IMG/VR virus record: IMGVR_UViG_3300036715_004471
Location: 186,001-250,000 of that record
Length of the DNA: 64,000 nucleotides
Direction: 5' to 3' (one strand)
The notes beneath the pieces were generated by a model, which was not told the origin of the DNA, made no database searches, and saw nothing but the letters and a program-made list of their open reading frames with translations. Both the position numbers and the translations under genes were made by a program. Below, in pieces: positions 9,403 to 62,371 of the stretch (the stretch's first letter is position 1; each line of letters starts with the position of its first letter).

Positions 9403-9422
9403 TTGTTTTGGTATATATCAGC

Positions 9423-9797
9423 TTATTTTTCTCCGGGTAATTTAGGCTCAAATGGTCCTTTAATAGTATCTGTAATTTGTAATGTCTTTTCTAAATCATC
9501 AACCAATTTTTCAGCCCATGAAACTAAAGTTTTATCAATTTTCGATATATCCACGTTTTCTACATCATAATAAGCAACTAAAGTAGCAGCAATTTTCCAT
9601 AAATCTTTATGAACATTTTCACTCATCTCTTGAAATGAATATTGTGCTTGTTCTTTCTTATTTGTAAAAGGCGTTAAATTGCGTTTTTCATCTATAGCTG
9701 ATTCTACAGCTTTTGCTAATTTATTCATACCTTGTTCTTTAGCTTCATCAGCTTGTAATTTTATTTTATTATATACGGAGTTTTTTAATATAATCAT
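9423..9797 (-). CDS. Small helical hypothetical protein (124 aa)
   Basis: ATGA overlap with the spike gene stop; charged and helical. Confidence 0.6.
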   Translation of the reverse strand: MIILKNSVYNKIKLQADEAKEQGMNKLAKAVESAIDEKRNLTPFTNKKEQAQYSFQEMSENVHKDLWKIAATLVAYYDVENVDISKIDKTLVSWAEKLVDDLEKTLQITDTIKGPFEPKLPGEK

Positions 9798-11806
9798 ATA
9801 GAGCCTCCAAATTCTTTCAAAACCATTCTACCTTGCACCGTTAATGTTTCACACTCAACAGTAATATCAGAATCCGCAGATAATCTCATATTTTGACCGG
9901 CATGAATGGATAGATTTCCGGGCGTTAATATTTTTACACCCTCATCATCAATTCTAATCATAGTAACTCTAAGACCAGAATTAAAAACTCTTATATCTAA
10001 TGCCGCACCGATATGACCATTATTTTGCTTAACAAATCTACTATCTGTAGATACGCCCATGCCACCCACTTGAATAAATACATCACCATTCATAGATAAG
10101 GCGCCGCTCATATTATTCATATCTCTGCCCACATTTAATACCATACCTCCGGCTAAATCTGCCCATAAAGATTGTCTATCAGAAGTATTCGCCCCAATAT
10201 TCAAATCCAAAGATCCATCCAAACTAATAGATCCGCTGCGTCCGCCAGCATTAGCTTTATCTCCACTAATTGTAATAGTATCAAGAGCCACTTTGGTTAT
10301 CAAAGGAATTTTAGCTACTGCACTCTTACTAAATACAGGGTTTTGATCATCAGATACATATTGCAAAAAGTCTGATTTTTGATGAGCATAACATGTAGCT
10401 AAAACATCATGATAAGCTGTGCCATGTTTAATATGGGATTTTGTAATTCTATCTAGTGGGGCGCCATCAGCGCCGTCATCATTCAATTTAATAGATCCTT
10501 TATCGTCAGAAAATGAACCATTACTAATATTGAAAGCACTTGCTGCGAAACTATCTTGAAAAATATCTAGATTATCATCTCTAAAAATTAACTTATTCGG
10601 ATTGTTATTATCTTCTGAGCCAAATGAAGAATAGTTTTCATATCTAGTTAATAATGGTATATTTCCCGTTTCACTAGAAGCTGGAACATTCCATTTGAAA
10701 ACCCCCTCTTTATCAACATCTAAAAAGAAACGGCTTCTATTTCTTGCATAATCATCATTAGAAGTAATATCAGGTAATGTTATTTGTCCATTTTGACCAG
10801 TTAAATCTTTTCTAGCATTAATCTCAAAATGATAAGCTAAACTCTTTCTTTCTAAGGCTTTAATCAATTGAAAAGATTTAACTTTATCAGTACTAGTTGC
10901 GGCACGAAGAGTGTTTTGATCTTTTCCAATAGGAAGAGGAGCTCTATTCAAATCTAAAATGTTACCGAAAATATCAACAACTGTACCCTTAATAGTCTCC
11001 ATCAAATAATTAGGAGAAGCTAAGGTTAAACTCAAAGTATCTGATCTGCTTTTTCTACGATTTGGAAAAGTAAAAATGGTAGATGGTGGTTTAGTATTAC
11101 CATATAAAGTTGATTCAAACAAATCATCATTTATTTCTGATGAATATTGAAATTCATAAACCATCTCTCTTTTTTCTACAAAAGGAGGGTTCTTTCCCGA
11201 ACCCGTAATAATAGGATTTGGACTGACTGTTGGGTCCAATCCAATCAAATAAAACTTAGAATCATAACTATCATTTTCTAGTTTTGAATTTTGATCAAAA
11301 TTTGTATTTGGTTTCAAATCTCTTTTGATTAATCCATCTACTCTTCTTGATGCTTGTGTAAAATGATTTTCGTTGTAGAAATTAGTTGTAATTAAGTTAG
11401 ATTTTGCATTGATATGTATCTTGTTATTTGATCCGCCAATGTTAATATCTGTACTGGTATTTAGAGAAATTTTAGATTCGTCAGCAGCTCTGATTAACAA
11501 CTCTCCGTCTGTTAAAATAGGAACTACTGGTAGATTTTCTGCTAAAAATGAAACGAAATAATACTGTCCACCACTACCTTGTCCAACTACAACTGGTGTG
11601 CCGGTGGCGGGCTTAGTTCCAATAAACAAACCATTATTATAGAACATAGTATGTGGCGCCGGCACATCAATTGACTGTGCTTGTCCTCTGATAGACGAAA
11701 CTGTATTGAGTCTTACTTTAAGTAAACCTTTGCTAGAATCATATCCAATGATTGCTCCAGTTCTTAAAAGACCAACTTCTTCATCAAAAACATGATTATT
11801 TACCAT
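9794..11806 (-). CDS. Baseplate central spike (gpV/gp5-like); start revised to ATG 11806
   Basis: N-terminal OB-fold-like segment (GAIIGYDSSKGLLKVRL...KPATGTPVVVG); C-terminal beta-helix-like repeats (IRIDDEGVKILTPGNLSIHAGQNMRLSADSDITVE); follows the hub gene. Confidence 0.7.
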   Translation of the reverse strand: MVNNHVFDEEVGLLRTGAIIGYDSSKGLLKVRLNTVSSIRGQAQSIDVPAPHTMFYNNGLFIGTKPATGTPVVVGQGSGGQYYFVSFLAENLPVVPILTDGELLIRAADESKISLNTSTDINIGGSNNKIHINAKSNLITTNFYNENHFTQASRRVDGLIKRDLKPNTNFDQNSKLENDSYDSKFYLIGLDPTVSPNPIITGSGKNPPFVEKREMVYEFQYSSEINDDLFESTLYGNTKPPSTIFTFPNRRKSRSDTLSLTLASPNYLMETIKGTVVDIFGNILDLNRAPLPIGKDQNTLRAATSTDKVKSFQLIKALERKSLAYHFEINARKDLTGQNGQITLPDITSNDDYARNRSRFFLDVDKEGVFKWNVPASSETGNIPLLTRYENYSSFGSEDNNNPNKLIFRDDNLDIFQDSFAASAFNISNGSFSDDKGSIKLNDDGADGAPLDRITKSHIKHGTAYHDVLATCYAHQKSDFLQYVSDDQNPVFSKSAVAKIPLITKVALDTITISGDKANAGGRSGSISLDGSLDLNIGANTSDRQSLWADLAGGMVLNVGRDMNNMSGALSMNGDVFIQVGGMGVSTDSRFVKQNNGHIGAALDIRVFNSGLRVTMIRIDDEGVKILTPGNLSIHAGQNMRLSADSDITVECETLTVQGRMVLKEFGGSI

Positions 11807-21578: not shown

Positions 21579-24341
21579 TTATATTTGTCCGACACTTACT
21601 TTGATGTAAATGAAGTTGACTGGATAGCTTGGTTGTACTCTTACAGAAATATTCCATTGTGTTGGATCTACATCATCTTGTACTACGCTTAGATCGGCGT
21701 AGTTAGTGATTAATCCTTGAGAAACCAAAGAGTTTAACAAGATAACTGCGCGAGTATTCAATACTGCTCCAGTGTTTTTATCTTGTGGTAAACCAATGTA
21801 ACCAGCAAAACCAGCTCTTAATGTCTTGGCAACTCTGTCTCTAATGAATACAATAGAGATTTCTTGTTCTTCAACAAAACCACTTTGAGAAGTGGTCAAT
21901 CCCCAGATTACTCTACCTCCACCAGCGACTGGTTGTAAGGTACAAACTCCAGCTGCTGCCAATTGTTCAAGTGTTGCTGTAGAAAGTGTCTTGTTTCTTA
22001 GAATTGTGAATCCAGATAACACTTTATTGGTTAAAGGATTTTGGATTTGCACATCTGCTGATTCATATCCGGCGGCGGCGGCTGCAAGATAGAATCCGTC
22101 AATTAAGACATTATCTGCACCGGCTTGTACCACAATTTGATCAGGATAGAAATACACACATCTATATGTATTGCCGAAAGCATTTGATACTGAATAGTTG
22201 GCAAGATCTTCTACGTTTCCAGCTAACACATCAGTAATAGTTTCTCCTTGAATTCCTTCTAGAGTACCTATGTCTTCAACTGCGGCAGGTTTAGTTCCAA
22301 TTAAGTTTTCAGGCAATAATCCATTGATTGCCCCAATAAACAATACTCTTTCTTTCTTGTTACGAATATTGCTCATGGATTTGCAATGTGATAATGCATT
22401 CTGAAAAATAACAGAGATAGTTTGTTTTGGTAGTGGCACCAAAATGTCACATTCTACTACTTCTAGAGAGGCTAGAGCATTAATCCATCCAGCATCATAG
22501 AAAGATGCTTCTTTTTCATCAACTATAGTAACTCTTAATCCATATCCCATTGGGACTACGTTATGATTAATGACTATATAGTTACTAACACTTGATGAAT
22601 CCAATACTTCATATCTTACACCAATTTCATTAACAAGTGTTTTGCTAATTGTAATAGTATTTGTTAAGCTATCATATCCGGTAATATCATACAAACCGTT
22701 GTTATCTGCTGATCCATTAATTTGTAATCTACGAGTAAGTATACTGGTAATTGTACTAAAATCTACCGCTGAAGAATTCAAAGTTGCCGTGGCTGTACCT
22801 ATTAAATTAACCAAAGTTCCATCAACACCAGAGCCACCGCTAATTGGAAGTCCAGTAGAAATATCAATTACTTCAAAAGTAACTGAAGACTCCGTGACGA
22901 AATCAGGGAATGTTTCATGAGTTACATACAATTGCCCATTACTTACGGCGTCAATAGTATAAGTACCAATATTGGCAACATTTACAGCATCAATAACTTT
23001 TAAGGTTTTTCCAACATGATAAGAATCAAATATAATAGATGCTCCGAACACACCTTTATCAAGGAAGGCGGGATTTCTACCAACATATCCATCTTCTCCG
23101 GTTGCCATAATTGCCAAACTTTCTTTGACAGTATAGAAATATGAGAAACCTGCTGGGGCTGAAGTATCATCAAAAATGAATTGATCAGTGGTTGGATTAC
23201 CAGATGTATCCAAAGTATAAAAATCCAATTTATTAGGAAGAATCTGATTTTCTACATTGGTAGAATTATTCTTAACAAAGAAATGGATATTAGAATCAAA
23301 ATCTGGAGTTACACCTAATGGTAGCGGGAAAATAAAATCATCCCCATTCAACGAAGCAGCATTTACTGCTTCTTCCAAAATGTAAGAACGTCTTGTTGGC
23401 ATTGGAGGAGCAGCTTGAACTGTAATCAAAGTTGGAGCATTATTAGCATAAGCTAATTGGGCGCCCAAAGCCAAATTATTAGTCAAACTTGGGAAACCAT
23501 GTCTGGTAACTACATCTCCCATACCTTGAGTTAAAACAGGATCATTCAAGAAAGTAGATGGAATGTAATTTGCAGTTAAAGAATCACTTCTAACTAATAC
23601 TCCGCTACTAATTTTAACAGTGAATGCGTCGCCCTCTCTAAATGGAGAGGTAACTACAGACATAACTTGAGTTTCTGAAATAGAGAATCTTAATATGCCG
23701 TTACTAACAAGTTGGTCATTAGCAACCCAAATAATTGGATTACCATTTGCATCAAGTTTAGATCCAGAAATAGAACCAATAGCTAAGAACTTAGCAGTTC
23801 CAGCAATTGGTTGATTCAAAACGTTTCTTTGAACAGATACGCATCTAATAGTCCAAATCTCTGGTGGAGCATTTGAGTCAACCAAAGATAAGTTATTGAC
23901 TGTTCCCAAACCAACGTTAGTAGATAGTGGAATATAAAAAGCGCCTCCCTGATCTACAAGGTGTGCTTTTTGTAATTCAACTTTTCCAGAAGAAATATCA
24001 ATTCTATAATCATAGTTATTGCTAAATGGGTTAGAATCAATAAGAGATTCTAAACCAACTAGTGGAATACCATTTTTGAAAATTCTTGTTCTGTTAGAAA
24101 TTAATGGGAAGTTTGATAGTTGAAAATGTCTACCGTCAGCGCCAGATGTAGATGAGTAGGAAGAATTCAAACCATCGCTACCACCACCATTTGCTTGTGA
24201 TACGAGCGTTTCATCAGTTGAACCTTCACCTATCATAGCGGCAACACGTGATCCTCCAGGAATTGACGTTCCACGTGATTGAGTAATTACGTCAGTTGTT
24301 ACTCCTGGTATTAAACCAGCTCCCCCAGGTTGATTTGCCAT
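21579..24341 (-). CDS. Contractile tail sheath protein with inserted domains
   Basis: Sheath C-terminus (EQLAAAGVCTLQPVAGGGRVIWGLTT...EISIVFIRDRVAKTLR...DPTQWNISVRVQPSYPVNFIYIKV); RBS AGAGGAG. Confidence 0.9.
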   Translation of the reverse strand: MANQPGGAGLIPGVTTDVITQSRGTSIPGGSRVAAMIGEGSTDETLVSQANGGGSDGLNSSYSSTSGADGRHFQLSNFPLISNRTRIFKNGIPLVGLESLIDSNPFSNNYDYRIDISSGKVELQKAHLVDQGGAFYIPLSTNVGLGTVNNLSLVDSNAPPEIWTIRCVSVQRNVLNQPIAGTAKFLAIGSISGSKLDANGNPIIWVANDQLVSNGILRFSISETQVMSVVTSPFREGDAFTVKISSGVLVRSDSLTANYIPSTFLNDPVLTQGMGDVVTRHGFPSLTNNLALGAQLAYANNAPTLITVQAAPPMPTRRSYILEEAVNAASLNGDDFIFPLPLGVTPDFDSNIHFFVKNNSTNVENQILPNKLDFYTLDTSGNPTTDQFIFDDTSAPAGFSYFYTVKESLAIMATGEDGYVGRNPAFLDKGVFGASIIFDSYHVGKTLKVIDAVNVANIGTYTIDAVSNGQLYVTHETFPDFVTESSVTFEVIDISTGLPISGGSGVDGTLVNLIGTATATLNSSAVDFSTITSILTRRLQINGSADNNGLYDITGYDSLTNTITISKTLVNEIGVRYEVLDSSSVSNYIVINHNVVPMGYGLRVTIVDEKEASFYDAGWINALASLEVVECDILVPLPKQTISVIFQNALSHCKSMSNIRNKKERVLFIGAINGLLPENLIGTKPAAVEDIGTLEGIQGETITDVLAGNVEDLANYSVSNAFGNTYRCVYFYPDQIVVQAGADNVLIDGFYLAAAAAGYESADVQIQNPLTNKVLSGFTILRNKTLSTATLEQLAAAGVCTLQPVAGGGRVIWGLTTSQSGFVEEQEISIVFIRDRVAKTLRAGFAGYIGLPQDKNTGAVLNTRAVILLNSLVSQGLITNYADLSVVQDDVDPTQWNISVRVQPSYPVNFIYIKVSVGQI

Positions 24342-48203: not shown

Positions 48204-49217
48204 TTAGGCACCGATTACGACAGACTTACGACCAGCAGCAACACCGCGAGGGTTGACGATGGCGATACCAATTTCTTCGCTTACTACCCAACCAAGCTTC
48301 AATTGCTTTGGCTCGTCGGCTGGAAGAACTTCGATATCTTGTCTAATTGGCATAACACCAACGAACTCAGGATCGGCAGCTCCGTAGATGGTTCCTGGTG
48401 GAACAATCTTGCTTACCATGATGTCAGTACCCCAGATGTGAGCATAAAGACCGGTTTGTAGAACTTCTCTCATTGTGACAGGATCGAAATCACCACCACC
48501 AACGCCTTGTCCACCACCGCTACCCCACTTTAGAATATCAGTGAATTCATTGATATTCATGAAGTACTTAGTTATAACCAAGTCCCAACGATCGATTTGT
48601 TGCTTGATTTCAACAAGGTCTCTCTTCAAAAGACCGGCATCAGCGATGTCAGTTAGGGTGTTTTCAACAGAAGCTGCGGCATCAAGTGCTGCGAAAATGT
48701 TGGCATCTTCTTGAGCCATGATTTCTTGACGAGCCTTCTGTACAGATCTGTCAATTACATTGAATCTACGACGTCTAACTTCGTTAATTCTGACAGTTGG
48801 GTTTGCGTAGATTTCGAAGGTAGGTACTACTACTCTATCACCGAATACTCTGGATTCTGGACCAGTACCGTTAGAGGAAATAACAACGGCTGAAACATCG
48901 ATATCTCTATCATATGTTGGTTGAGCACCTTGAGGTAGAGGATCTACAACTAAGGCTCTACGTGCGATACCATGGTAATCCAAGTTTCTACGAATTGGGT
49001 TTGCCATAGCTTGAGCTAGAGCAATTTTACCGTCTTGAGTCATAATAGCACGAGAGATCAACTCGTCGCGTCTGTCATCACTCAAGGCTACTTGACCGGC
49101 TAATCCCATATTAGCTGGTTGATTCTCTTCCAAAATTGCTGCATACTTAACTAATTGCTGCAACATATCCTTCAAAGAGGATGCGTTCATTGCGCCTTGG
49201 TTGTTGAACATATTCAT
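48204..49217 (-). CDS. Major capsid protein (HK97-like fold)
   Basis: IALAQAMANPIRRNLDY...VVVPTFEIYANPTV...QKARQEIMAQEDANIFAAL...GWVVSEEIGIAIVNP; strong RBS AGGAG; follows a cement gene and is followed by a terminator. Confidence 0.85.
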   Translation of the reverse strand: MNMFNNQGAMNASSLKDMLQQLVKYAAILEENQPANMGLAGQVALSDDRRDELISRAIMTQDGKIALAQAMANPIRRNLDYHGIARRALVVDPLPQGAQPTYDRDIDVSAVVISSNGTGPESRVFGDRVVVPTFEIYANPTVRINEVRRRRFNVIDRSVQKARQEIMAQEDANIFAALDAAASVENTLTDIADAGLLKRDLVEIKQQIDRWDLVITKYFMNINEFTDILKWGSGGGQGVGGGDFDPVTMREVLQTGLYAHIWGTDIMVSKIVPPGTIYGAADPEFVGVMPIRQDIEVLPADEPKQLKLGWVVSEEIGIAIVNPRGVAAGRKSVVIGA

Positions 49218-50155: not shown

Positions 50156-51409
50156 TTATAATCCGTCTGATAAATCTTTTTCTAGATCAGCAACTTCATC
50201 ATCAATGCTTTTTGGTTTACCTGGTGCTTTACCTTTTCCATTTGTTGGAGCAGATGGTGCTTCAGTAGCTTTTTCTCCAGTTAATTCCGCAGTATCAGCA
50301 GCCGCGTCCTGTATTTTTTGTTGAGCAGATTTCTCAATAGATTCTGCGTTTTTTAATAGAGATACCATTTCAGCAACAGATTTTTTGTAAGGAGCGATAG
50401 CTCTAACTACATCATCAAAATCATCTGCTACTAGTCCTTTTCCACCATGAAAAATTTGAGTTTTATCAACCAAAGATGACATAAAACCCTTATCTTCTAT
50501 TTGTCTAGCTTTATAGCTTTCAGAAGAAAAATTCTTTTCTACAGCCACAATGTATGGCAACATGTTGCTAGCTGCTGATTTTAATGTTCCATAAGCTTTA
50601 ACTACTGAATTAGTTGCCGGAGCTTTAGACAATGCTATTAAATCCTTAGCAGTTCTTGGTCTTTCCAGATCAGTAATAAGTGGCTCTACTTTATCGTATA
50701 AATCATGAAAACTAACTAACTTACTTTTAAAATCTTGTACCATATCTTTGAATTCTGATTTGTAGTCATACCCAACTCCCCATGAAGCACTGGCAGTTAA
50801 CAAATCATCAATTTCTGCAATCAACTTATTATGATTTTTATCAAAACCTTCATTGATAAAAGACATGTGTTGTTGTACGTATAATGATCCTAAAAGAATT
50901 GGAATGGCAATTAATACGGCAGTTTGAACGAAAGCTTTCTTTTGTAATTGTGGTTGCGCAACTTGCATCAAACAAGTATCGGCTAAAGCTCTAAGCTTAT
51001 CTTCACTTCTATTATCTAGATCGTTACCCAATCTAACTAATGATAATATCAAATCTTTTTCAGCATATTTATGTTGTGTTAAATGACCATCTGGAATTTT
51101 ATTTACAATGTTAATAATAATGTTTTGTCTTTCTATATTATTCTCTACCAAACCATTTAGTTTATCATGAGATGGTGCGGCAATATAAGATGTAGGATGA
51201 GCATCTTCCATAATGTTCTTTTTATACTCATTTCCTTTTGCCATTTCAACTTTAATACCATAAAGCTTAGCAATATCCTCTTCACTCAAAGAATCTGCCC
51301 TATGAGTTCTTTCAAGTATTTTCTTTGCTTTTTCAGGAGCATCTTCAGAAATCAATCCCTTTTCTTGGGCTATTTTGAAAAAGTTTTCTAAAACGTTATT
51401 GTTGCTCAT
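50156..51409 (-). CDS. Putative internal head/ejection protein (417 aa)
   Basis: Lies between protease and MCP; hydrophobic helix after LQKKA; N-terminus paralogous to 55269..56381. Confidence 0.5.
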   Translation of the reverse strand: MSNNNVLENFFKIAQEKGLISEDAPEKAKKILERTHRADSLSEEDIAKLYGIKVEMAKGNEYKKNIMEDAHPTSYIAAPSHDKLNGLVENNIERQNIIINIVNKIPDGHLTQHKYAEKDLILSLVRLGNDLDNRSEDKLRALADTCLMQVAQPQLQKKAFVQTAVLIAIPILLGSLYVQQHMSFINEGFDKNHNKLIAEIDDLLTASASWGVGYDYKSEFKDMVQDFKSKLVSFHDLYDKVEPLITDLERPRTAKDLIALSKAPATNSVVKAYGTLKSAASNMLPYIVAVEKNFSSESYKARQIEDKGFMSSLVDKTQIFHGGKGLVADDFDDVVRAIAPYKKSVAEMVSLLKNAESIEKSAQQKIQDAAADTAELTGEKATEAPSAPTNGKGKAPGKPKSIDDEVADLEKDLSDGL

Positions 51410-51449
51410 TCAATTCTCTCTATGGCTGAAATTATACGATAATACCAAC

Positions 51450-52526
51450 TTATGTAGTCCTATCAGCTACATCATCAATGAAGTAGTCGACAATTTGCTT
51501 TTTAGATCCAAAATATCTTGGCAGCCAAATCATGGGTGATTCGGGACTGGAATGATTATATTGAACAATTCTATCTTTGACAACTTGAAATGCTGGAGAA
51601 CTTTTAATAAGACTCTCTTTCCCGTCTAAACCATCATATACTGTTTTAGCAAAATTGACTAACATATATTCTATAGAGCCAGAATTATTAGTTACTCTTT
51701 CCATCCAAAGAGAATCTCCAACATTGTATTTCTCTGGAGCATAACCAGATTTAACTGGAAACTTCTTTTGTTTAGATACATTGACTGGAATAGCACTTTG
51801 AGATGATTGATCAATCGGCTCTCCCTTCTGCATTGTTCCGTCAAGTGCGTTAGGTCTATTTAAGAATTTGTTAACTACATCGCCGGCTACCACGAGCCCG
51901 GCAGACGCCAAAGCAACCTTAAAAATCCAACTTAAAACCCTGGTTAAAATAAATGCTGTTCTGGATTTTCTAGCACTAAACATTTCAAAAAATCCAGCCT
52001 CTTTTTTAAAGGCTCCACTTTGATAACTAATCATTGCAATCTTAACGAATTTAGCATCTCTTATCATTTTAGATGCAGATTTAGTTTTAGATGCTTGATC
52101 AGCCTCATCTTGAGTGGCAGGCGTGTAATTTTCTTGAACAGCTTCTTGCACAAAAGAATCTACTTGAGAAGAAGAAACTGGTTTATCACCAACAGTTACA
52201 GATTTAATCTTACTCCAAATAGAATTAATTATATTTTTAACATTGATATTGAAAACTCTCATTGATAATCCAATAAGCGCTCCTAACCAACCTAATCCCA
52301 TACTAGAAAAAGCAACAGAAATAACACCAGGTCCTAAAATATTGATTAAACTGCCTACTTTATCTTCTGGATTAACGTGACCGCTTACATAGTTCTTAAC
52401 TTTTTCTGTAAGTGTCGCCACCATACCACCAACTTGAGCTTGCTTAAATAGCTGCTCATCTTTTAAGATGGTTTCTACAATAATGCTATCAACGTAGAAA
52501 TTTATTTCGCTACTATTACTTCTCAT
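51450..52526 (-). CDS. Putative internal head/ejection protein with hydrophobic helices (358 aa)
   Basis: GVISVAFSSMGLGWLGALIGL and LSWIFKVALASAGLVVAG segments; ATGA overlap. Confidence 0.5.
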   Translation of the reverse strand: MRSNSSEINFYVDSIIVETILKDEQLFKQAQVGGMVATLTEKVKNYVSGHVNPEDKVGSLINILGPGVISVAFSSMGLGWLGALIGLSMRVFNINVKNIINSIWSKIKSVTVGDKPVSSSQVDSFVQEAVQENYTPATQDEADQASKTKSASKMIRDAKFVKIAMISYQSGAFKKEAGFFEMFSARKSRTAFILTRVLSWIFKVALASAGLVVAGDVVNKFLNRPNALDGTMQKGEPIDQSSQSAIPVNVSKQKKFPVKSGYAPEKYNVGDSLWMERVTNNSGSIEYMLVNFAKTVYDGLDGKESLIKSSPAFQVVKDRIVQYNHSSPESPMIWLPRYFGSKKQIVDYFIDDVADRTT

Positions 52527-55268: not shown

Positions 55269-56381
55269 TCAATCTATCCAGTTAGATTTGAATTCGCTGA
55301 AAGAAGGGGTAGTAATCTTCTTTAGATTTCCCAACAATATAGATGCATTTTGTTCTTTTTCTTCGTCTTCCATGCCCTCTAATTGTGCTTTAACACCTTG
55401 TACTTGATTCATTTTAGCAGAAATCCATTGATTAGCTTGTTTTTTTTCAGCATCTTCTAAATCCGGATCTGTAGCTATTTTAGCTTGAAATCCTTTCAAT
55501 ACAGAAAAAGCATTTCCTAACCACTTGTTAAGAATGTTTAATTGCGAAGCTACTTTAGGGGCGGCGGCAGCCGGTTCGGATAAAGCTTTCTGTATTGTAC
55601 CTAAAGCAGTATTGGCTTTAGCAAATAATGATGTCATTCCTGCCCAAGTTTCATTAGGCACCCCGCCAATAATTGTTCCTGGCTTAAAAGCACTATAGAA
55701 ACTATCTAATCCTAATTTGATCATTGGCAGAATTCGTTCTAATGAGGAAGGATTGCCAGCGTTACTAATGGCTTGATTAATATAATTAATTAAAGTGTCT
55801 TTACCAGAAGCGATTGGTCTAGTTAGGAAGCTTTGATCTTCGTGTAATACAAAAATAGTTTGAACAGAATTCAACACAATATTCAAATTTTGAACTATTG
55901 TTGGATTGGCGGCTTGTGCTAAAACAATTTTAACAGATCTTAAAATATCTTTATTTGAAGCTAATTTACCAGTAGGTTTCTTTTCAGTAAGTTTAATGCC
56001 AGCAAGGTGTTGATCAATAATCGTTTCGATAACGTTATCTCCATCCATATCAGTTAATTTATGAGAACCTTTTGGATGAGCCGCATCAACTAAATCTTCG
56101 TCCTTCTCTTTGGAAGTTTCATAAAGAGTTTGTGCACTCTTATAAGACATGAATTTAGACTCAACATCATCAGCATATTTATCTAAACCTGATGCTCTTA
56201 AACCTGAACATAGCTTCATAATATTTTCTGTTAGGTTAACAGAAATAGATAAATCAGTCTCATTAAGAGAGGCAATTTTAGACAAAGATTTTACTGGAGG
56301 AAGCCAGCCCTTATCTCTTGCTACTCTTTCTAAAGAGCGCATGGTAACAGAATCTTCGAATTTTACATGCTTAAAAGTCAT
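55269..56381 (-). CDS. Putative internal head protein (370 aa)
   Basis: GAGG RBS; N-terminus paralogous to the 417-aa protein. Confidence 0.5.
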   Translation of the reverse strand: MTFKHVKFEDSVTMRSLERVARDKGWLPPVKSLSKIASLNETDLSISVNLTENIMKLCSGLRASGLDKYADDVESKFMSYKSAQTLYETSKEKDEDLVDAAHPKGSHKLTDMDGDNVIETIIDQHLAGIKLTEKKPTGKLASNKDILRSVKIVLAQAANPTIVQNLNIVLNSVQTIFVLHEDQSFLTRPIASGKDTLINYINQAISNAGNPSSLERILPMIKLGLDSFYSAFKPGTIIGGVPNETWAGMTSLFAKANTALGTIQKALSEPAAAAPKVASQLNILNKWLGNAFSVLKGFQAKIATDPDLEDAEKKQANQWISAKMNQVQGVKAQLEGMEDEEKEQNASILLGNLKKITTPSFSEFKSNWID

Positions 56382-56631: not shown

Positions 56632-57318
56632 TTAATACCAAAGAACTTCAATCATTGGGTTCATAGTTGTAGGGGGAGCTGTGACCATACCTACAGCGGG
56701 ATGAATAATACTAGGTCTACGAGTAGTTAAAAATCCAACTTCACTAACATACAAATTAGCTTTAACAGGATATTGCTGATTGGTTTCATATTGATCAGTT
56801 TGAAAAAACATTCTATTAAACCAAACAGTTACTCTACCAGATCCCTGAGTGCTATCATCTCCGGGAATATTGGCAACTTGATAAGTATAATTCACAATTG
56901 TTTTAATACCATTTGGTTGCCCTGTACCCATGATATCTATATTTAAAGGCGTACCAGCCAAAAAAGTAATAACTCCGTTAACTGGATTCAAAGTAACTTT
57001 AACTGTAGATGAAAAACTGGTTGAAACAATATTTGGTCTTCTTAATTCGGCTTTAATATCAATTGGTGTAACTAATATACCACCAGATGCCACTCCAACC
57101 GCAGGCACAATTACTTCTTCATTCCACGAAACATTGGTAAAAGCCCTGGTTTTAATATCATCAATAATGCCAAGAGGCGCCGTGCCATTACTGACAGTTG
57201 CCATTACTTGGTTTCCTAATACTGTTAATTCTGCTATTTGTCCCGGCTGAAATTCAGCTGAAGGATCGCAAATAAAACTGGCAGGAAGAGTATTTCCAAC
57301 TTGAACTAATCTAAGCAT
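56632..57318 (-). CDS. Second cement/decoration-like protein (paralog of 49336..50007)
   Basis: Shared motifs MLRLVQVG/MALKLLQPG, PLGIIDD/PLMLCDD, GSGRVTVW/GSGKVTLW. Confidence 0.55.
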   Translation of the reverse strand: MLRLVQVGNTLPASFICDPSAEFQPGQIAELTVLGNQVMATVSNGTAPLGIIDDIKTRAFTNVSWNEEVIVPAVGVASGGILVTPIDIKAELRRPNIVSTSFSSTVKVTLNPVNGVITFLAGTPLNIDIMGTGQPNGIKTIVNYTYQVANIPGDDSTQGSGRVTVWFNRMFFQTDQYETNQQYPVKANLYVSEVGFLTTRRPSIIHPAVGMVTAPPTTMNPMIEVLWY

Positions 57319-57375: not shown

Positions 57376-57780
57376 TTAATCTCTTTCCTCTTCAAAATCG
57401 TGTAATTCTATACCCATATCTCCATCAGATACTTCTAATGTATCCTCTACATCAACATCAAGTAAATTATTTGCTTCACCATCATCTGATAAATTCATTG
57501 GATGACCATGGTCCTTCAAATTATTAACCATTTTTTCAGGAGTTAATCCATTGGTATGACGATCACTTGGGACTTGGGTTTTGTTAGCAATCTTTTCCAA
57601 AATGTTAACAATTTTCTCGGCATTTCTACTCATACCAAGATTTTCAAAAATCTCGGCAGCTGAATTTAAATAATCCACAGCCTGCTCAAGATTATCACAA
57701 TCTTGTTGAGTAGCTTGCTTCACCAATTGGCGATGCATACCAGAGATCAATTCTTCTTCAAAAACACTTTTTTTGATCAT
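57376..57780 (-). CDS. Small head-associated protein, helical-module family (134 aa)
   Basis: Paralog of 57791..58021; acidic tail. Confidence 0.6.
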   Translation of the reverse strand: MIKKSVFEEELISGMHRQLVKQATQQDCDNLEQAVDYLNSAAEIFENLGMSRNAEKIVNILEKIANKTQVPSDRHTNGLTPEKMVNNLKDHGHPMNLSDDGEANNLLDVDVEDTLEVSDGDMGIELHDFEEERD

Positions 57781-57790
57781 GGTTTCTGCC

Positions 57791-58021
57791 TTATTTAACT
57801 GAAGTCTTACCTAATTGTTTTGATAAACCTTGCAAGACTTCCGTTACCTCAGCTGCCTCACTATACATACCTGCTTTGTCAAATAATGACGCAGCAGCGT
57901 TTAAGTAATCGGCAGCTTTGGAGATCTTATCAAAGCTGAATTTGTTTTCCAATTGGTTAGAAACCAATTTAGTTTCCATCGAACGATAAATTTCGTCTTC
58001 AAAGCTGCCGGTCTTAAACAT
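57791..58021 (-). CDS. Small head-associated protein, helical-module family (76 aa)
   Basis: FEDEIYRSMETKLV and AADYLNAAASLFDKAGM match the neighbour's FEEELISGMHRQLV and AVDYLNSAAEIFENLGM. Confidence 0.6.
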   Translation of the reverse strand: MFKTGSFEDEIYRSMETKLVSNQLENKFSFDKISKAADYLNAAASLFDKAGMYSEAAEVTEVLQGLSKQLGKTSVK

Positions 58022-58750: not shown

Positions 58751-61700
58751 TTAGAACATTCTCTTGGAAGTCTTATTGAATGCTGCGGACAATAATGACC
58801 AGTCATCTTCCACTTGTGCTACGTTATTTTCACCAGAACCAAGTATTCCTACTTGAGGCATACGACCAGCTTCTTTACGCATTGTTGGGCTGTGTTTTGC
58901 AACTACTCTCTTCAAAGTATCGAAACTGTCGTCGTTAAACTTCATGATTTCATCAACTTGTGAGGCGATAGCGATCTTATCGCTGTGGCATAAACCACGG
59001 TCAACCATATCGTAAGCTACTTCGTAAGCTCTTGCAAGCTTGACTTTGTATTTGTTCAACTCATCTTCCATTTGAGCCTTGACATGTTCTTTGACTAATT
59101 CACTGGCGAATTCACCACCACCGTCAACTTGACTGAAGTATTTCTTGTAATAAGAAACAGCATCCTTATCTAGACCTTCTGATACTAGAGCATCAAGATC
59201 AGCTGGGTCAAGTTTACCTTCACTAATTAATCTGTGAATGGCTTCGGCTTCTTTACGAACCTTTGGTGGAGCTTTTGCAAGATCCATCATAGCCTTGTTA
59301 ACTTCTGAAAGGGTTTCTACATAACCCATGTTATCAGATGGCTTGGTATCAAGACCCTTGACTTGACCGTCGGCTAGATTATCGGCTGTATCCATAATGT
59401 CGAAGAATTTAGCTCTAGACATATCTTGAAGTTGTCCGTCATCTTGCTTACCAGTTGGATCAAAAGCGAACTTTCCTAAAGCTTCAGCAGCCAACTTAGC
59501 ACGCATTACGTTGCGCCTTGATCTGTTATCAAAACCAGCAGTTACTTGAACTGTTGTTCCTGGCTTGACATTCAAGTCTTTCAACTCTTCTTTGTTAGCC
59601 ATTAGATCATTGTCATCAGCAAGTGCTGAACCATCAAAAACTTGATCTTGACCGTCAGGACCTTCTTCACCCAAATCTGGGAAACTTTCATCTTCTCCTA
59701 AGCCTTCGCCCAAATCTTCGGAACCGACAGAACCTTCATCCAAATCTTCAAGAGTTGGATCCGCATCACCATCTGTCATGTGAGCGTTATCATCATCGTC
59801 CATCATTTCTTTGACGGAACCTAAATCCCTATTTGTATCTTCAATAAGAGCCATTAAGCTGTCATCGCCACTACCACTCATAGATTCTCCCTCAGCCTCA
59901 GCAAGTGCTTCAAGTTCTGCTTCGATTTCAGCACGTTTGACGATAGCTTTGGTGCCACGAGCATATTTAACGAAGGCAGTCATTAGTCTGAAACCATCTG
60001 CAACGGCAGTCTTGGCTTCGTTTGTTGCATCTTCTAAGATAGAATTAACTAGATCTTCATTGGAGCCAGTAACCGCTCCCTTGTCATATAATCCTACAAT
60101 AGTGCTCAATTCTTCTTCGTGATCGTTAAGCTCAGCAATTACTTCCTTCATGGCGCTAGTCATAGACTCATTCAATTCGCCTCTCAAGGAATTCATTTGC
60201 TCTGTGCTAAAGTCTGAGGCAGTAGCACCCATTTCGGCACCACTAGCACCAATGTCAGCGCCCATTTCAGCTTGTTCACCAGTCAAAGCTCTTACAGCCT
60301 CTACTAGATCAGAGGAAAGGTCTCTAACTTTTTCAGCCAACTCAACTGCGGATTCTTTTGGATCACCAGTTTTACCAGTATCTTCTCCAGTAGGAGCAGC
60401 ACCGGCACTAGGATCAACTGGAGGGGCAGCGGGAACTGCGGCGCCAGCAGAAGGATCAGCAGGAGGTGGGGTTTGAGCATTTTTTACCAAATCACGGACT
60501 CTATCAGCACCGTAAACTTTAACTTTTTCAAGTAATCTTTGACCGAATTCAGCGGTATTAATGGTATCGTACATCATTTCAGAACGACCACCGGAAAGTT
60601 CTCTAACAGAGGCAGACAATAATAGTTTGTCTCCTAAACGAATTTCCCATGCGCTGTTTTCTAGATCTCTGGTTCCATCATTTCTAGAAGCTCTAACGAA
60701 TCTACCATGTAGAGTATTAGCTCTACGTAGCATTTCTTTACGCTTTAATTCATCAGAAGTGTCTGCTGATTCTGGGCTTGGGTGTAAGCCGTCTACTTTG
60801 CCTACATCTGGGAATGGCTTTTGACCATGCATGTGCTTATCATCTTCGTAAGCCATGTGACCCTTATCAGCTGGATACTTTGGTTTACCCGGAGTTGGAG
60901 CGCCCGGATTCTTATCGTCTCCATTTAAGAAGTAAGCCTTTTTCTCTTCCAAAGCTTGCTTGGCAAGGTTTACAATTGCTTGACGACGCAAAGCCTTTTC
61001 TTCTGCATCGGCACGAGCAAGCATTCTCTTACGCTCTAGCTCGGAGACTCCGGAGCTTTCAACACCAGGGTGCATACCATCAACTGGTCCTATATCTGGG
61101 AATGGCTTTTGTCCATGAAGATGCTTGTCCTCTTCATAAGCCATGTGACCTGGATCCTTTGGATATTTAGGTTGACCAGGGGTAGGTTCTTCCGTTCCTT
61201 GGTAGTAACCTTGTTTATTCATTTCTCTTGAAGACATAGTTTCCTCGTGTATATTTGTAGACTTTGCTAACTTATCCAAACTTTGTTTCATATGATTCAA
61301 TTTTGCTTCGATTGCTGCTGTAACTTCACGCAGCTCTTCAATTGAAGTCGTTTCAATTTTAGATGAAGCAAATCTTGCATGTGGTGGAGCTAATCCAGAA
61401 TCAGTATTAGGAGTTTCTATCTCATCATTTATAGAGATAGAACCTGAAGATTGATTAAATGCAAGATCATTAGTATCTTTTTCAGAATTTTCTACAGAAC
61501 TATTTATATCCTGTAATTTTCTGAATGCTGTCTCGATATCTTTTTTGAATTCTTCGAAGGCACTTTGAGATGATAATTTGCCAAATTCCTTAGATTTATT
61601 CTCAAGATAAGTATTCAGAGTATGAGCAGAAGCAATAATGTGTTTAATATTTGCTTTAGGATCGGCGCCATTAACTACAATGGATAATTCAATTGGATTC

Positions 61701-62371
61701 AAATCCACATTGATTTCACCATAACCAGTCTTACGCCTCATGTGTTCACAAAAATCTGCCTCAGCTCTAGCTACAGTAGCACAATCACTACAAATGGCTC
61801 TACCTACAGCGGTACCCATAGATACGCAGTTAGAATAACCAGTAGAAACCTTTCTAGCTAAATCTGGATAATTATGTTTGTCTAAAGCACAAAGAGCAAT
61901 TACTCTTTTCAAATTACGATCATAATAAGTATCAACAATAAAACCTCTTACATGATCGACTGAGCTTGATTTATGATCTATGCAAAGAGGCTTGTGAACC
62001 CATTTTTTATAAGCTTTTACTAATTCTTCTTCCGGAAAAATATCTCCATTAGAATTCTTATATGGCTTGATGCTTGGATCATTAGATGTCCAGCGCCAAG
62101 TGCCACCTCTTTTATCCCAACCAACTTGTACTTGTTCTCCTCTAGCATTTAGCTTGAGAGTACCATCATCGTTGAGAGAAGATGCCTCAGCAGCATGCAT
62201 CATAACAGCTGAGAAATACAAAAAGTCTTCAGCCTTAGGAGCTATCTTCTTAAGATTAGCGGCTGTTTTTCTAAAATTTTCCAATACTTCAGCACTGACT
62301 GCCGGAATACAAGATTCTGTATTCTCAATTCTGCTGATTTCAATAAGTTCACCCAATTTGACAAATGGCAT
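58751..62371 (-). CDS. Prohead protease-scaffold fusion (HK97/assemblin-type protease domain)
   Basis: N-terminal domain with PLCIDH (His), CVSMG (Ser) and IELSIVVNGADP; remainder acidic and coiled-coil, scaffold-like. Confidence 0.75.
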   Translation of the reverse strand: MPFVKLGELIEISRIENTESCIPAVSAEVLENFRKTAANLKKIAPKAEDFLYFSAVMMHAAEASSLNDDGTLKLNARGEQVQVGWDKRGGTWRWTSNDPSIKPYKNSNGDIFPEEELVKAYKKWVHKPLCIDHKSSSVDHVRGFIVDTYYDRNLKRVIALCALDKHNYPDLARKVSTGYSNCVSMGTAVGRAICSDCATVARAEADFCEHMRRKTGYGEINVDLNPIELSIVVNGADPKANIKHIIASAHTLNTYLENKSKEFGKLSSQSAFEEFKKDIETAFRKLQDINSSVENSEKDTNDLAFNQSSGSISINDEIETPNTDSGLAPPHARFASSKIETTSIEELREVTAAIEAKLNHMKQSLDKLAKSTNIHEETMSSREMNKQGYYQGTEEPTPGQPKYPKDPGHMAYEEDKHLHGQKPFPDIGPVDGMHPGVESSGVSELERKRMLARADAEEKALRRQAIVNLAKQALEEKKAYFLNGDDKNPGAPTPGKPKYPADKGHMAYEDDKHMHGQKPFPDVGKVDGLHPSPESADTSDELKRKEMLRRANTLHGRFVRASRNDGTRDLENSAWEIRLGDKLLLSASVRELSGGRSEMMYDTINTAEFGQRLLEKVKVYGADRVRDLVKNAQTPPPADPSAGAAVPAAPPVDPSAGAAPTGEDTGKTGDPKESAVELAEKVRDLSSDLVEAVRALTGEQAEMGADIGASGAEMGATASDFSTEQMNSLRGELNESMTSAMKEVIAELNDHEEELSTIVGLYDKGAVTGSNEDLVNSILEDATNEAKTAVADGFRLMTAFVKYARGTKAIVKRAEIEAELEALAEAEGESMSGSGDDSLMALIEDTNRDLGSVKEMMDDDDNAHMTDGDADPTLEDLDEGSVGSEDLGEGLGEDESFPDLGEEGPDGQDQVFDGSALADDNDLMANKEELKDLNVKPGTTVQVTAGFDNRSRRNVMRAKLAAEALGKFAFDPTGKQDDGQLQDMSRAKFFDIMDTADNLADGQVKGLDTKPSDNMGYVETLSEVNKAMMDLAKAPPKVRKEAEAIHRLISEGKLDPADLDALVSEGLDKDAVSYYKKYFSQVDGGGEFASELVKEHVKAQMEDELNKYKVKLARAYEVAYDMVDRGLCHSDKIAIASQVDEIMKFNDDSFDTLKRVVAKHSPTMRKEAGRMPQVGILGSGENNVAQVEDDWSLLSAAFNKTSKRMF

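What the first reader, a model, noticed from the sequence alone, without database searches (positions are those of the whole stretch)
50880..52440. Hydrophobic helices begin right after predicted cleavage sites in two internal proteins
417-aa: LQKKA then FVQTAVLIAIPILLGSLYV. 358-aa: FKKEA then GFFEMF...ILTRVLSWIFKVALASAGLVVAG, with another Gly-rich hydrophobic helix after LFKQA. Processing would expose membrane-inserting segments, as expected for ejected proteins that form a DNA-entry channel. Such machinery is best known from podoviruses.
Basis: inference. Interest (0 to 1): 0.6.

Follow-up and report, generated by a model that had tools for sequence, protein, structure and literature searches.

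The report
Cleavage-primed hydrophobic head proteins of a megaphage
Two conserved orphan proteins in the head-gene block of an uncultivated 447-kb contractile-tailed phage carry membrane-like helices just downstream of motifs that look like capsid-protease cutting sites, which suggests (unproven) that they are injected with the DNA and act on the host envelope, as proposed for gp47 of giant phage SPN3US.

Summary
In the 417-aa protein (50156-51409, minus strand) a 19-residue hydrophobic helix starts directly after LQKKA (aa 155-159). In the 358-aa protein (51450-52526) the hydrophobic cores lie about 20 and 27 residues after FKKEA and LFKQA, not right after them.

The motif [LIVMF]-x-K-x-A is real. 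It occurs in the first 40 residues of 10 of 16 head-module ORFs against 41 of 593 elsewhere in the genome. It is about threefold above composition-matched shuffles, specific for K and A, and conserved in about 175 homologues of each protein. It falls in low-confidence linkers of the AlphaFold models. In distant relatives it marks the exact end of a shared ~155-aa N-terminal module.

One positional orthologue of the 417-aa protein carries a peptidoglycan peptidase (M23) domain.

No homology to any named family was found. The closest analogue is SPN3US gp47, which the prohead protease cuts so that the mature fragment begins with a transmembrane helix.

The phage has a tail sheath, and a tail-module protein has much stronger membrane segments, so a DNA-channel role is unproven.

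Verdict: plausible processed, ejected, envelope-active head proteins. This is a new variant of a known kind, of moderate interest.

The parts
50156..51409 (-). p417, a 417-aa orphan head-module protein. Layout: N-terminal module, linker motif, hydrophobic helix, long helical bundle, charged tail, conserved C-terminal helix.
   Evidence: ORF. No Pfam, PHROG, phage tblastn or PDB match. 401 homologues by word search and 557 representatives by profile search. AlphaFold model.
50933..51409 (-). N-terminal module of p417 (aa 1-159). Candidate targeting or propeptide domain that ends at the LQKKA motif.
   Evidence: It is homologous to the N-terminus of p370 (hhalign 94%, E 8.5e-8). It occurs alone in front of other C-terminal parts in 12 listed representatives, and in 11 of those it ends exactly at the motif.
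51368..51382 (-). FFKIA (aa 10-14), the N-terminal motif copy of p417.
   Evidence: K is 95% and A is 90% conserved in 63 homologues.
50933..50947 (-). LQKKA (aa 155-159), the candidate maturation cleavage site of p417.
   Evidence: K157 is invariant in alignment A2, inside an otherwise variable linker. pLDDT is below 50 at aa 153-164. 172 of 175 homologues have the motif here.
50876..50932 (-). Hydrophobic helix of p417 (aa 160-178).
   Evidence: KD 2.07, apparent insertion energy +2.3. In homologues the sequence varies but the segment stays hydrophobic, with median +2.35.
50300..50902 (-). Long helical-bundle core of p417 (aa ~170-370).
   Evidence: AlphaFold helices and higher pLDDT. Only generic bundle matches, VIA Z up to 11.6.
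51450..52526 (-). p358, a 358-aa basic (pI 9.2) orphan head-module protein.
   Evidence: ORF. 165 homologues. No named family. Model. pI.
52437..52451 (-). LFKQA (aa 26-30), the N-terminal motif of p358.
   Evidence: K is 100% and A is 95% conserved. pLDDT is below 50 at aa 24-33.
52251..52358 (-). Gly-rich hydrophobic region of p358 (aa 57-92).
   Evidence: Best window at aa 69-87, +1.9. Conserved hydrophobic profile.
51996..52010 (-). FKKEA (aa 173-177), the internal motif of p358.
   Evidence: K is 81% conserved. P1 is A in 56% of homologues, with G or S in others. pLDDT is below 50 at aa 175-180.
51879..51968 (-). Second hydrophobic helix of p358 (aa 187-216). It includes the near-invariant Ala/Gly-rich core.
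   Evidence: Best window at aa 197-215, +2.8. A209, G210, G215 and D216 are invariant.
58751..62371 (-). 1206-aa protein with a head-maturation-protease domain (aa ~106-216) and a long acidic C-terminal part that carries 11 motif copies.
   Evidence: phrog_18299 at E 2.6e-14. Its family HMM hits phage G gp19 and gp21. Motif count. pI 4.9.
48204..49217 (-). Major capsid protein, with LVKYA at aa 22-26 (nt 49140-49154).
   Evidence: phrog_2522 at E 1e-77. 54% identical to phage G gp27, which lacks the first ~40 residues. The motif is 94% conserved.
55269..56381 (-). p370, a paralogue that shares the N-terminal module of p417 but has no hydrophobic helix.
   Evidence: hhalign. Minimum insertion energy +7.7.

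Best explanation
p358 and p417 are internal head proteins of a clade of uncultivated ~450-kb contractile-tailed phages whose capsid protein is related to that of Bacillus phage G.

Proposed sequence of events:
1. They are built into the prohead together with a protease-domain protein.
2. The protease is inferred to cut after [LIVMF]-x-K-x-A. In p417 this would remove a ~159-residue N-terminal targeting or propeptide module. The mature fragment would then begin with a marginally hydrophobic helix in front of a helical bundle.
3. In p358 a 30-residue leader would be removed. A second cut after residue 177 may split the protein into two basic fragments, each with a Gly/Ala-rich hydrophobic segment.
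4. The fragments stay in the DNA-filled head, leave through the tail at infection, and use the hydrophobic segments to engage the host cytoplasmic membrane or envelope.

What is shown: gene position, motif enrichment and conservation, conserved hydrophobicity, domain modularity, and one orthologue with a cell-wall peptidase.

What is inferred: cleavage, retention in the virion, ejection and membrane insertion. Whether they line a DNA channel, only anchor or open the membrane, or depolarise it is open.
For: Head-module context and conserved gene order in 79 related loci.

Motif evidence:
- It occurs in the first 40 residues of 10 of 16 head ORFs against 41 of 593 others (Fisher p 4e-8).
- There are 31 copies against 9.6 +/- 3.0 in composition-preserving shuffles, and 10 N-terminal copies against 1.06 +/- 0.97. 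Control patterns (K to R, reversed, shifted) stay at background.
- K and A are conserved inside variable linkers.
- The sites coincide with pLDDT dips.
- The N-terminal module ends exactly at the motif in 11 of 12 distant relatives whose C-terminal parts differ. A Gly/Ala-rich hydrophobic segment follows in each.

Architecture and function hints:
- The layout is kept in divergent loci binned with Bacteroidota MAGs, even where sequence similarity of the p358 counterpart is lost.
- The positional orthologue P0372 (gene order p358-like, then P0372, then decoration-like) has Peptidase_M23 at 89 bits.
- p358 is basic, like DNA-associated internal proteins.

Precedent: SPN3US gp47 is cut by the prohead protease, and a transmembrane helix follows the site by 8 residues (PMC5694885). 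In SPN3US, 13 of 14 mapped cuts remove N-terminal propeptides (PMC10052503). By analogy, the helix-bearing C-terminal part would be the mature virion component here.
Against: - There is no proteomic, structural or functional data for any member, because the phage is uncultivated.
- The hydrophobic segments are only marginal (+1.9 to +2.8 kcal/mol) and could be buried in a protein core.
- In p358 they are 20-27 residues away from the motifs.
- p417 is acidic, largely helical and sits near the capsid gene, like a scaffold.
- The M23 fusion is a single cluster on one 4.4-kb contig.
- The motif was generalised after looking at these same proteins, so the genome statistics are post hoc.
- The phage has a sheath and a tail-module protein with far stronger membrane segments, so head proteins are not needed to explain DNA entry.
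- No fold or sequence link to any known ejection protein.
Confidence: 0.5

Rival explanations
1. Assembly-only role. p417, and perhaps p358, are scaffold or core proteins. Their hydrophobic helices drive oligomerisation of the prohead core, or hold it transiently at the inner face of the membrane. The protease cuts them so that the fragments leave the shell before DNA packaging, and nothing is ejected into the host.
For: - p417 lies two genes upstream of the capsid gene.
- It is acidic (pI 5.5) and made of long helices, with a disordered charged tail and a conserved terminal helix.
- T4 and SPN3US proheads are membrane-bound until the protease acts (PMC5694885; PMC10052503).
- Both proteins evolve fast relative to the capsid protein (42-44% against 93% identity).
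Against: - The 1206-aa protease-fusion protein is a better scaffold candidate. It has an acidic ~1000-residue C-terminal part with 11 motif copies. I note from memory that this resembles the fused protease-scaffold of phage P2.
- p417 and p358 each have only 2-4 motif copies and well conserved globular parts, so they are unlikely to be chopped into small peptides.
- A single hydrophobic helix between two large domains gives an awkward membrane topology in the producing cell (inference).
- A scaffold would not be expected to acquire an M23 peptidase.
- p358 is basic.
Confidence: 0.25
2. The motif is not a cleavage site. [LIVMF]-x-K-x-A is a binding or targeting element, for example recognised by the core or portal. 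Alternatively, in p417 it is simply the positively charged flank of a hydrophobic helix. The proteins remain full-length and the hydrophobic helices are never unmasked.
For: - Residues after the N-terminal motif of p417 and p370 are as conserved as the motif itself, as in a structured recognition helix.
- Lysines commonly flank membrane helices.
- No cleavage data exist.
- The motif is not conserved in the capsid proteins of the more distant cultured phages Lu11 and Motura.
Against: - K is almost never replaced by R, and control patterns with R are at background. A mere charge flank would tolerate R.
- The motif sits in flexible linkers and at a domain boundary.
- It precedes the region where phage G's shorter capsid protein begins.
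- A protease-domain gene heads the module.
Confidence: 0.15
3. The two proteins are not virion components. They are late membrane proteins of the infected cell, for example for lysis timing or exclusion of other phages, and merely lie inside the head-gene block.
For: They have hydrophobic segments and no homology to any structural protein.
Against: - Strict synteny inside the head module in dozens of phages.
- The same N-terminal motif as the capsid protein and the other head proteins.
- The N-terminal module is shared with p370.
- The segments are too weakly hydrophobic for typical integral membrane proteins.
- No signal peptide-like N-terminus (sequence).
Confidence: 0.05

Closest known systems
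Salmonella giant myovirus SPN3US gp47 (PMC5694885)
   Same: It is a head protein of a giant contractile-tailed phage. The prohead protease cuts it at internal sites that remove an N-terminal propeptide of about 110 residues. The mature fragment begins with a predicted transmembrane helix, and the authors infer that it is an ejection protein touching the host membrane. In the annotated sequence the helix starts 8 residues after the ALE site. This is the same layout as p417.
   Different: There is no detectable sequence similarity. The protease motif differs (A-x-E against [LIVMF]-x-K-x-A). The gp47 helix is clearly hydrophobic (-1.2 kcal/mol) whereas p417 is marginal (+2.3). gp47 has genetic and mass-spectrometry support, and p417 and p358 have none.
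Podovirus ejection (core) proteins: T7 gp14, gp15, gp16 and P22 gp7, gp20, gp16 (review PMC8954989)
   Same: They are internal virion proteins that are soluble and folded in the capsid yet carry predicted membrane helices. They refold into an envelope-spanning conduit. T7 gp16 also carries a cell-wall hydrolase domain, which parallels the M23 domain in one p417 orthologue.
   Different: No homology was found. Those phages have short tails and need a tail extension, whereas this phage has a sheath. I know of no role for prohead-protease activation in T7. The gene position also differs.
T4 internal proteins and Alt, with their capsid-targeting sequence (described in PMC5694885)
   Same: Each has a short N-terminal leader that ends in the protease motif, is removed during maturation, and leaves the protein in the head for injection. 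The 14- to 37-residue leaders ending in the motif in p417, p358, p389, p370 and the capsid protein look analogous.
   Different: The T4 motif is L/I-x-E. The T4 internal proteins have no hydrophobic helices. There is no homology.
Maturation-primed membrane-active capsid peptides of animal viruses, such as adenovirus protein VI (from my own knowledge, not tested here)
   Same: The principle is the same. A capsid maturation protease frees or unmasks a hydrophobic or amphipathic segment that later attacks a host membrane at entry.
   Different: These are unrelated proteins and hosts. This is an analogy of mechanism only.
Tape measure proteins with Gly-rich hydrophobic segments
   Same: Distant relatives of the p417 module give weak PHROG matches to tape-measure segments over their Gly/Ala-rich hydrophobic parts (phrog_2335, E 5.7e-6). 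Tape measures are established candidates for membrane channels in long-tailed phages.
   Different: The matches are weak and compositionally biased. The genes lie in the head module, not the tail module, and the proteins are much shorter.

Membership tests
Protease-processed ejection proteins of giant myoviruses (SPN3US gp47 type) | Encoded among head genes and present in the virion | tested here: inconclusive
   Head-module position and synteny are met. Virion presence cannot be tested without particles.
Protease-processed ejection proteins of giant myoviruses (SPN3US gp47 type) | Cut by the prohead protease at the phage's own consensus motif | tested here: inconclusive
   The motif is enriched, specific, conserved, and located in linkers and at a domain boundary. 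There is no cleavage data.
Protease-processed ejection proteins of giant myoviruses (SPN3US gp47 type) | Mature fragment starts with a predicted membrane helix | tested here: met
   In p417 the helix starts at P1'. In p358 it is met only loosely, 20-27 residues downstream.
Protease-processed ejection proteins of giant myoviruses (SPN3US gp47 type) | Sequence homology to gp47 | tested here: not met
   No tblastn hit in the phage collection. Family HMMs score about 0 bits on gp47.
T7/P22-type ejection (core) proteins | Homology to the gp14, gp15, gp16 or gp7, gp20, gp16 families | tested here: not met
   No Pfam or PHROG family. No PDB sequence or fold match.
T7/P22-type ejection (core) proteins | Internal protein with cryptic membrane segments, sometimes with a cell-wall hydrolase | tested here: inconclusive
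   Marginal hydrophobic segments are present. An M23 peptidase is present only in the single orthologue P0372.
Scaffolding proteins | Gene next to the capsid gene; acidic, helical; binds the capsid protein | tested here: inconclusive
   p417 is near the capsid gene but separated from it by p223. It is acidic and helical. The co-folding test with the capsid protein gave no verdict. p358 is basic, so it does not fit.
Scaffolding proteins | Degraded into small fragments at many protease sites | tested here: not met
   p417 and p358 have 4 motif copies each, of which 2-3 are conserved with a hydrophobic P5. The 1206-aa protease-fusion protein has 11.
Tape measure proteins | Long protein in the tail module between the tube or chaperone genes and the baseplate genes | tested here: not met
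   The genes lie in the head module, about 27 kb from the sheath gene.

The most novel reading that the evidence does not exclude
The ~155-residue N-terminal module, the [LIVMF]-x-K-x-A site and a hydrophobic segment together form a previously unrecognised, widespread 'load-and-arm' cassette of megaphage heads. The module would load varied cargo into the prohead and mask the hydrophobic segment. A prohead protease with a new specificity (cutting after Ala, with Lys at P3) would arm it. The armed proteins would pass through a contractile tail and assemble in the host inner membrane as the conduit or gate for a ~450-kb genome.
Probability: 0.2. Interest if true: 0.7.

Novelty: new variant of a known kind. 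Interest (0 to 1): 0.45.

Why it matters
How giant phages move half a megabase of DNA and many proteins across the cell envelope is poorly understood, and almost all megaphages are uncultivated.

If correct, this finding gives three things:
- A sequence rule ([LIVMF]-x-K-x-A) that predicts which head proteins of this clade are processed.
- A portable N-terminal module that marks capsid cargo in hundreds of metagenomic protein clusters.
- Two conserved candidates for membrane-active injected proteins. These can be tested by expression in the laboratory without culturing the phage.

It would also show that the 'cut, then expose a membrane helix' layout of SPN3US gp47 arose independently in an unrelated giant-phage lineage.

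Tried and rejected
- Pfam and PHROG scans of both proteins found nothing.
- tblastn against 50,697 phage records found nothing.
- Profile searches of PDB sequences gave only chance hits.
- ESM Atlas look-alikes gave nothing usable.
- Foldseek against PDB gave nothing significant. ClyA at E 0.06 for p417 is a lead only.
- VIA wide search:
  - p358 reached at most Z 4.6.
  - The p417 bundle reached at most Z 11.6, against generic helical bundles. These included alpha-pore-forming toxins (AhlB Z 9.8, SmhA, MakB, NheA) among many unrelated proteins. That is below the level the tool calls meaningful for helical bundles, so I rejected it as evidence.
- BFVD returned only an uncharacterised homologue.
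- Family HMMs against the phage G head region gp7-gp40 matched only the protease (gp19, part of gp21) and the capsid protein. There is no p358 or p417 counterpart.
- Co-folding of the capsid protein with p417 residues 160-417 gave no verdict. I do not use it either way.
- The search for more M23 fusions failed. There was no close relative of P0372 in IMG/VR, and the 29 other M23 proteins found lack the p417 module.
- The capsid N-terminal motif is not conserved in the cultured phages Lu11 and Motura, so no published proteomics could be borrowed.
- The protease domain gave no PDB or Pfam assignment beyond the PHROG hit.
Full report
**Context**

The window is bases 186001-250000 of a 446,541-bp virus record. 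Almost all of its genes are on the minus strand.
- The 337-aa ORF at 48204-49217 is a major capsid protein (phrog_2522, E 1e-77). Its best cultured relative is Bacillus phage G gp27 at 54% identity.
- The 1206-aa ORF at 58751-62371 has a head-maturation-protease domain near its N-terminus (phrog_18299, E 2.6e-14). Its family HMM also matches phage G gp19 and part of gp21. PMC12484599 calls gp19 the head maturation protease.
- A tail sheath (21579-24341) and a baseplate wedge protein (973-5061) lie downstream, so the virion is of the contractile-tail type.

The transcription order of the head block is: protease-fusion (p1206), p260, p76/p134, p228, p370, p389, p520, p358, p417, p223 (decoration-like), capsid protein, p232, p221. 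This order recurs in related contigs.

**Observation**

Both ORFs and all quoted peptides are present.

In p417, LQKKA is residues 155-159. The next 19 residues form the most hydrophobic window of the protein, with Kyte-Doolittle mean 2.07 and summed Hessa-scale energy +2.3 kcal/mol.

In p358 the windows straight after LFKQA (26-30) and FKKEA (173-177) are not hydrophobic (KD 0.07 and 0.04). The hydrophobic parts are elsewhere:
- A Gly-rich region at residues 57-92, with its best window at 69-87 (+1.9).
- A core at residues 197-215 (+2.8) that contains a conserved Lys.

AlphaFold does place a helix from 179 to 208, so a helix begins right after FKKEA, but its first third is basic and amphipathic. 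Among the 16 head-module ORFs, only these two proteins have any window below +4.

**Is the motif real?**

- It occurs within the first 40 residues of 10 of 16 head-module ORFs, against 41 of 593 other ORFs of the genome (Fisher p 4e-8). Its density is 0.58 against 0.13 per 100 residues.
- Two paralogue pairs, p76/p134 and p370/p417, are among the ten.
- The pattern was defined after looking at these proteins, so the p-value is post hoc.
- Shuffles that keep each protein's composition give 9.6 +/- 3.0 copies against 31 observed. They give 1.06 +/- 0.97 N-terminal occurrences against 10 observed.
- Eight control patterns (K to R or E, A to S, G or L, reversed, register-shifted) stay at 6-13 copies and 1-3 N-terminal occurrences.

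Conservation in homologues from 79 IMG/VR loci:

| Protein | Site | K conserved | P1 small residue conserved |
|---|---|---|---|
| Capsid protein | L-V-K-Y-A (22-26) | 94% | 94% |
| p417 | F-x-K-I-A (10-14) | 95% | 90% |
| p417 | K157-x-A159 | 90% | 79% A, plus G |
| p358 | K28-x-A30 | 100% | 95% |
| p358 | K175-x-A177 | 81% | 56% A, plus G or S |

Further observations on the sites:
- K157 of p417 and K28/A30 of p358 are invariant or nearly so, inside stretches where neighbouring columns vary freely in sequence and length.
- Arg hardly ever replaces Lys.
- In both AlphaFold models, the stretches with pLDDT below 50 include 24-33 and 175-180 in p358 and 153-164 in p417. The sites therefore lie in predicted flexible linkers.
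- Phage G's capsid protein lacks the first ~40 residues that carry the motif.

Together this makes a protease recognition site the best reading, but no cleavage has been observed.

**Conservation of the architecture**

- Of 175 unique p417 homologues, 172 have the motif within 25 residues upstream of the hydrophobic window. In 149 the uncharged run begins at P1 or P1'. The median window energy is +2.35.
- The hydrophobic stretch drifts in sequence but stays hydrophobic. It ends in a conserved G-x-[IL]-Y-x-Q-H. That drift is more typical of a lipid-facing or loosely packed helix than of a tightly packed core.
- For p358, 171 of 177 homologues keep the first motif and 170 of 177 keep the second. 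The second lies about 20 residues before the hydrophobic core.
- In a divergent locus binned with a Bacteroidia MAG, the p417 homologue has IKKKA followed by a +1.1 helix. The ORF in the p358 position no longer matches the p358 HMM. It still has an N-terminal motif and a second motif 14 residues before a Gly/Ala-rich hydrophobic segment.
- In this genome alone, only 4 of 53 hydrophobic segments have a motif within 12 residues upstream. The case therefore rests on conservation rather than on the single genome.

**Modularity**

- hhalign links the first ~110 residues of p417 to those of p370 (probability 94%, E 8.5e-8), with shared motifs before and after the N-terminal K-[IV]-A.
- A profile of the p417 family found 557 representative proteins at E <= 0.001 among 1.84 billion.
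- Twelve of the listed hits match only profile positions 1 to about 155. In 11 of these the match ends exactly at a [LIVMF]-x-K-x-[AS] motif, and a Gly/Ala-rich hydrophobic segment follows 25-40 residues later. The remaining C-terminal parts are unrelated.
- The N-terminal part thus behaves as a portable module bounded by the motif. This resembles the long propeptides of SPN3US head proteins, where 13 of 14 mapped cuts remove N-terminal propeptides of 20 to 254 residues (PMC10052503).

**A functional hint**

One of these relatives, P0372 (586 aa), carries a Peptidase_M23 domain at residues 422-515 (89 bits against a cut-off of 28.7).
- On its 4.4-kb contig it sits between a p358 homologue (E 3e-34) and a p223 homologue (E 5e-79). 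It is therefore the positional orthologue of p417.
- M23 enzymes cut peptidoglycan cross-links. In phages they are typical of virion-associated lysins that act at entry (my knowledge, consistent with the PHROG names).
- This fits a protein that leaves the capsid and works on the envelope. It does not fit a scaffold.
- It is a single case. No close relative exists in IMG/VR, and other M23 proteins found lack the module.

**Comparison with known systems**

No sequence or fold relation to any named family was found.

The closest published analogue is SPN3US gp47. It is an essential head protein cut by the prohead protease at AVE-79 and ALE-111. [quoted passage not shown] In the annotated sequence the helix (-1.2 kcal/mol) starts 8 residues after ALE.

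T7 gp14 and gp16 and P22 gp16 are internal proteins with cryptic membrane regions (PMC8954989). So the kind of thing is known, and it is known in a giant myovirus. What is new here:
- Two unrelated protein families.
- A different and previously undescribed candidate protease motif.
- The portable N-terminal module.

**Rivals**

An assembly-only role is the main alternative. p417 is acidic, helical and near the capsid gene. T4 and SPN3US proheads stay on the membrane until the protease acts. Four points argue against it:
- The protease-fusion protein, with its long acidic tail and 11 motif copies, is the better scaffold candidate.
- The cut would leave the hydrophobic helix on the larger, conserved fragment.
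- A single helix between two large domains would force one domain across the membrane in the producing cell.
- One orthologue carries the M23 domain.

The co-folding test of p417 with the capsid protein gave no verdict.

The motif could instead be a binding element rather than a cut site. The strong conservation after the N-terminal copy keeps that open.

The specific claim of a DNA-entry channel is weakest. The phage has a sheath. The 724-aa protein at 7228-9402 in the tail and baseplate region has three strongly hydrophobic segments (down to -6.4 kcal/mol), which makes it at least as good a candidate for a membrane conduit.

**Host**

Capsid relatives occur on contigs binned as Bacteroidia, Chitinophagales and 'Candidatus Berkiella' MAGs. 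The G+C content is about 33%. A Bacteroidota host, and hence a two-membrane envelope, is possible but unproven, because binning of phage contigs is unreliable.

**Verdict**

- Most likely (about 0.5): these are processed internal head proteins that are injected and act on the host membrane or envelope.
- A channel role specifically: perhaps 0.2.
- Novelty: a new variant of a known kind.
- Interest: 0.45.

Noticed in passing
window 58751-62371 (-): This 1206-aa protein has a protease domain at the N-terminus, followed by ~1000 acidic residues (pI 4.9) that carry 11 copies of the motif, several of them 97-100% conserved. A stretch (HMM positions 904-961) resembles phage G gp21. It looks like a fused protease-scaffold and is the likeliest true scaffold of this phage.
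   Followed up: partly
window 7228-9402 (-): This 724-aa protein lies in the tail and baseplate region. It has three strongly hydrophobic segments between residues ~89 and 232 (minimum -6.4 kcal/mol) and a Cys-rich stretch after them. It has no Pfam or PHROG match. It is a candidate membrane-inserting tail component and a competitor for any DNA-channel role.
   Followed up: partly
window 55269-56381 (-) and 50156-51409 (-): p370 and p417 share a homologous ~110-residue N-terminal module (hhalign 94%). The same module heads many otherwise unrelated metagenomic proteins.
   Followed up: yes
window 57376-58021 (-): p134 and p76 are paralogues (hhalign 99.5%). In related loci they occur as alternating tandem copies (p134, p76, p134, p76). 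They are small, acidic and helical, and each carries the motif.
   Followed up: no
window 56632-57318 (-): p228 is 82% identical across related loci, close to the capsid protein's 93%, while the neighbouring internal proteins are only 25-45% identical. It has no motif and no family match. It may be a second shell or vertex protein.
   Followed up: no
G000:C1:415822-416244 (-), locus L002: A 165-aa ORF elsewhere in the genome is 45% identical to residues 53-184 of the capsid protein. It is a partial capsid-protein paralogue or remnant.
   Followed up: no
L086:7984-10462: In the Chitinophagales-binned contig the capsid gene appears split. A 90-aa N-terminal piece (7984-8256) is followed by an unrelated 403-aa ORF (8686-9897). 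The capsid match then resumes at query residue 94 (from 10001). This suggests an intron, intein or mobile insertion in the capsid gene.
   Followed up: no
loci L084-L086: Capsid relatives (76-93% identity) lie on contigs binned as Bacteroidia, Chitinophagales and 'Candidatus Berkiella' MAGs. This hints at Bacteroidota hosts for the clade. IMG/VR labels the window's own record a provirus, although it is a 447-kb phage-like genome.
   Followed up: partly
window 52523-52526: The p358 start codon overlaps the p520 stop by 4 nt (ATGA), which suggests translational coupling within the internal-protein gene run.
   Followed up: no
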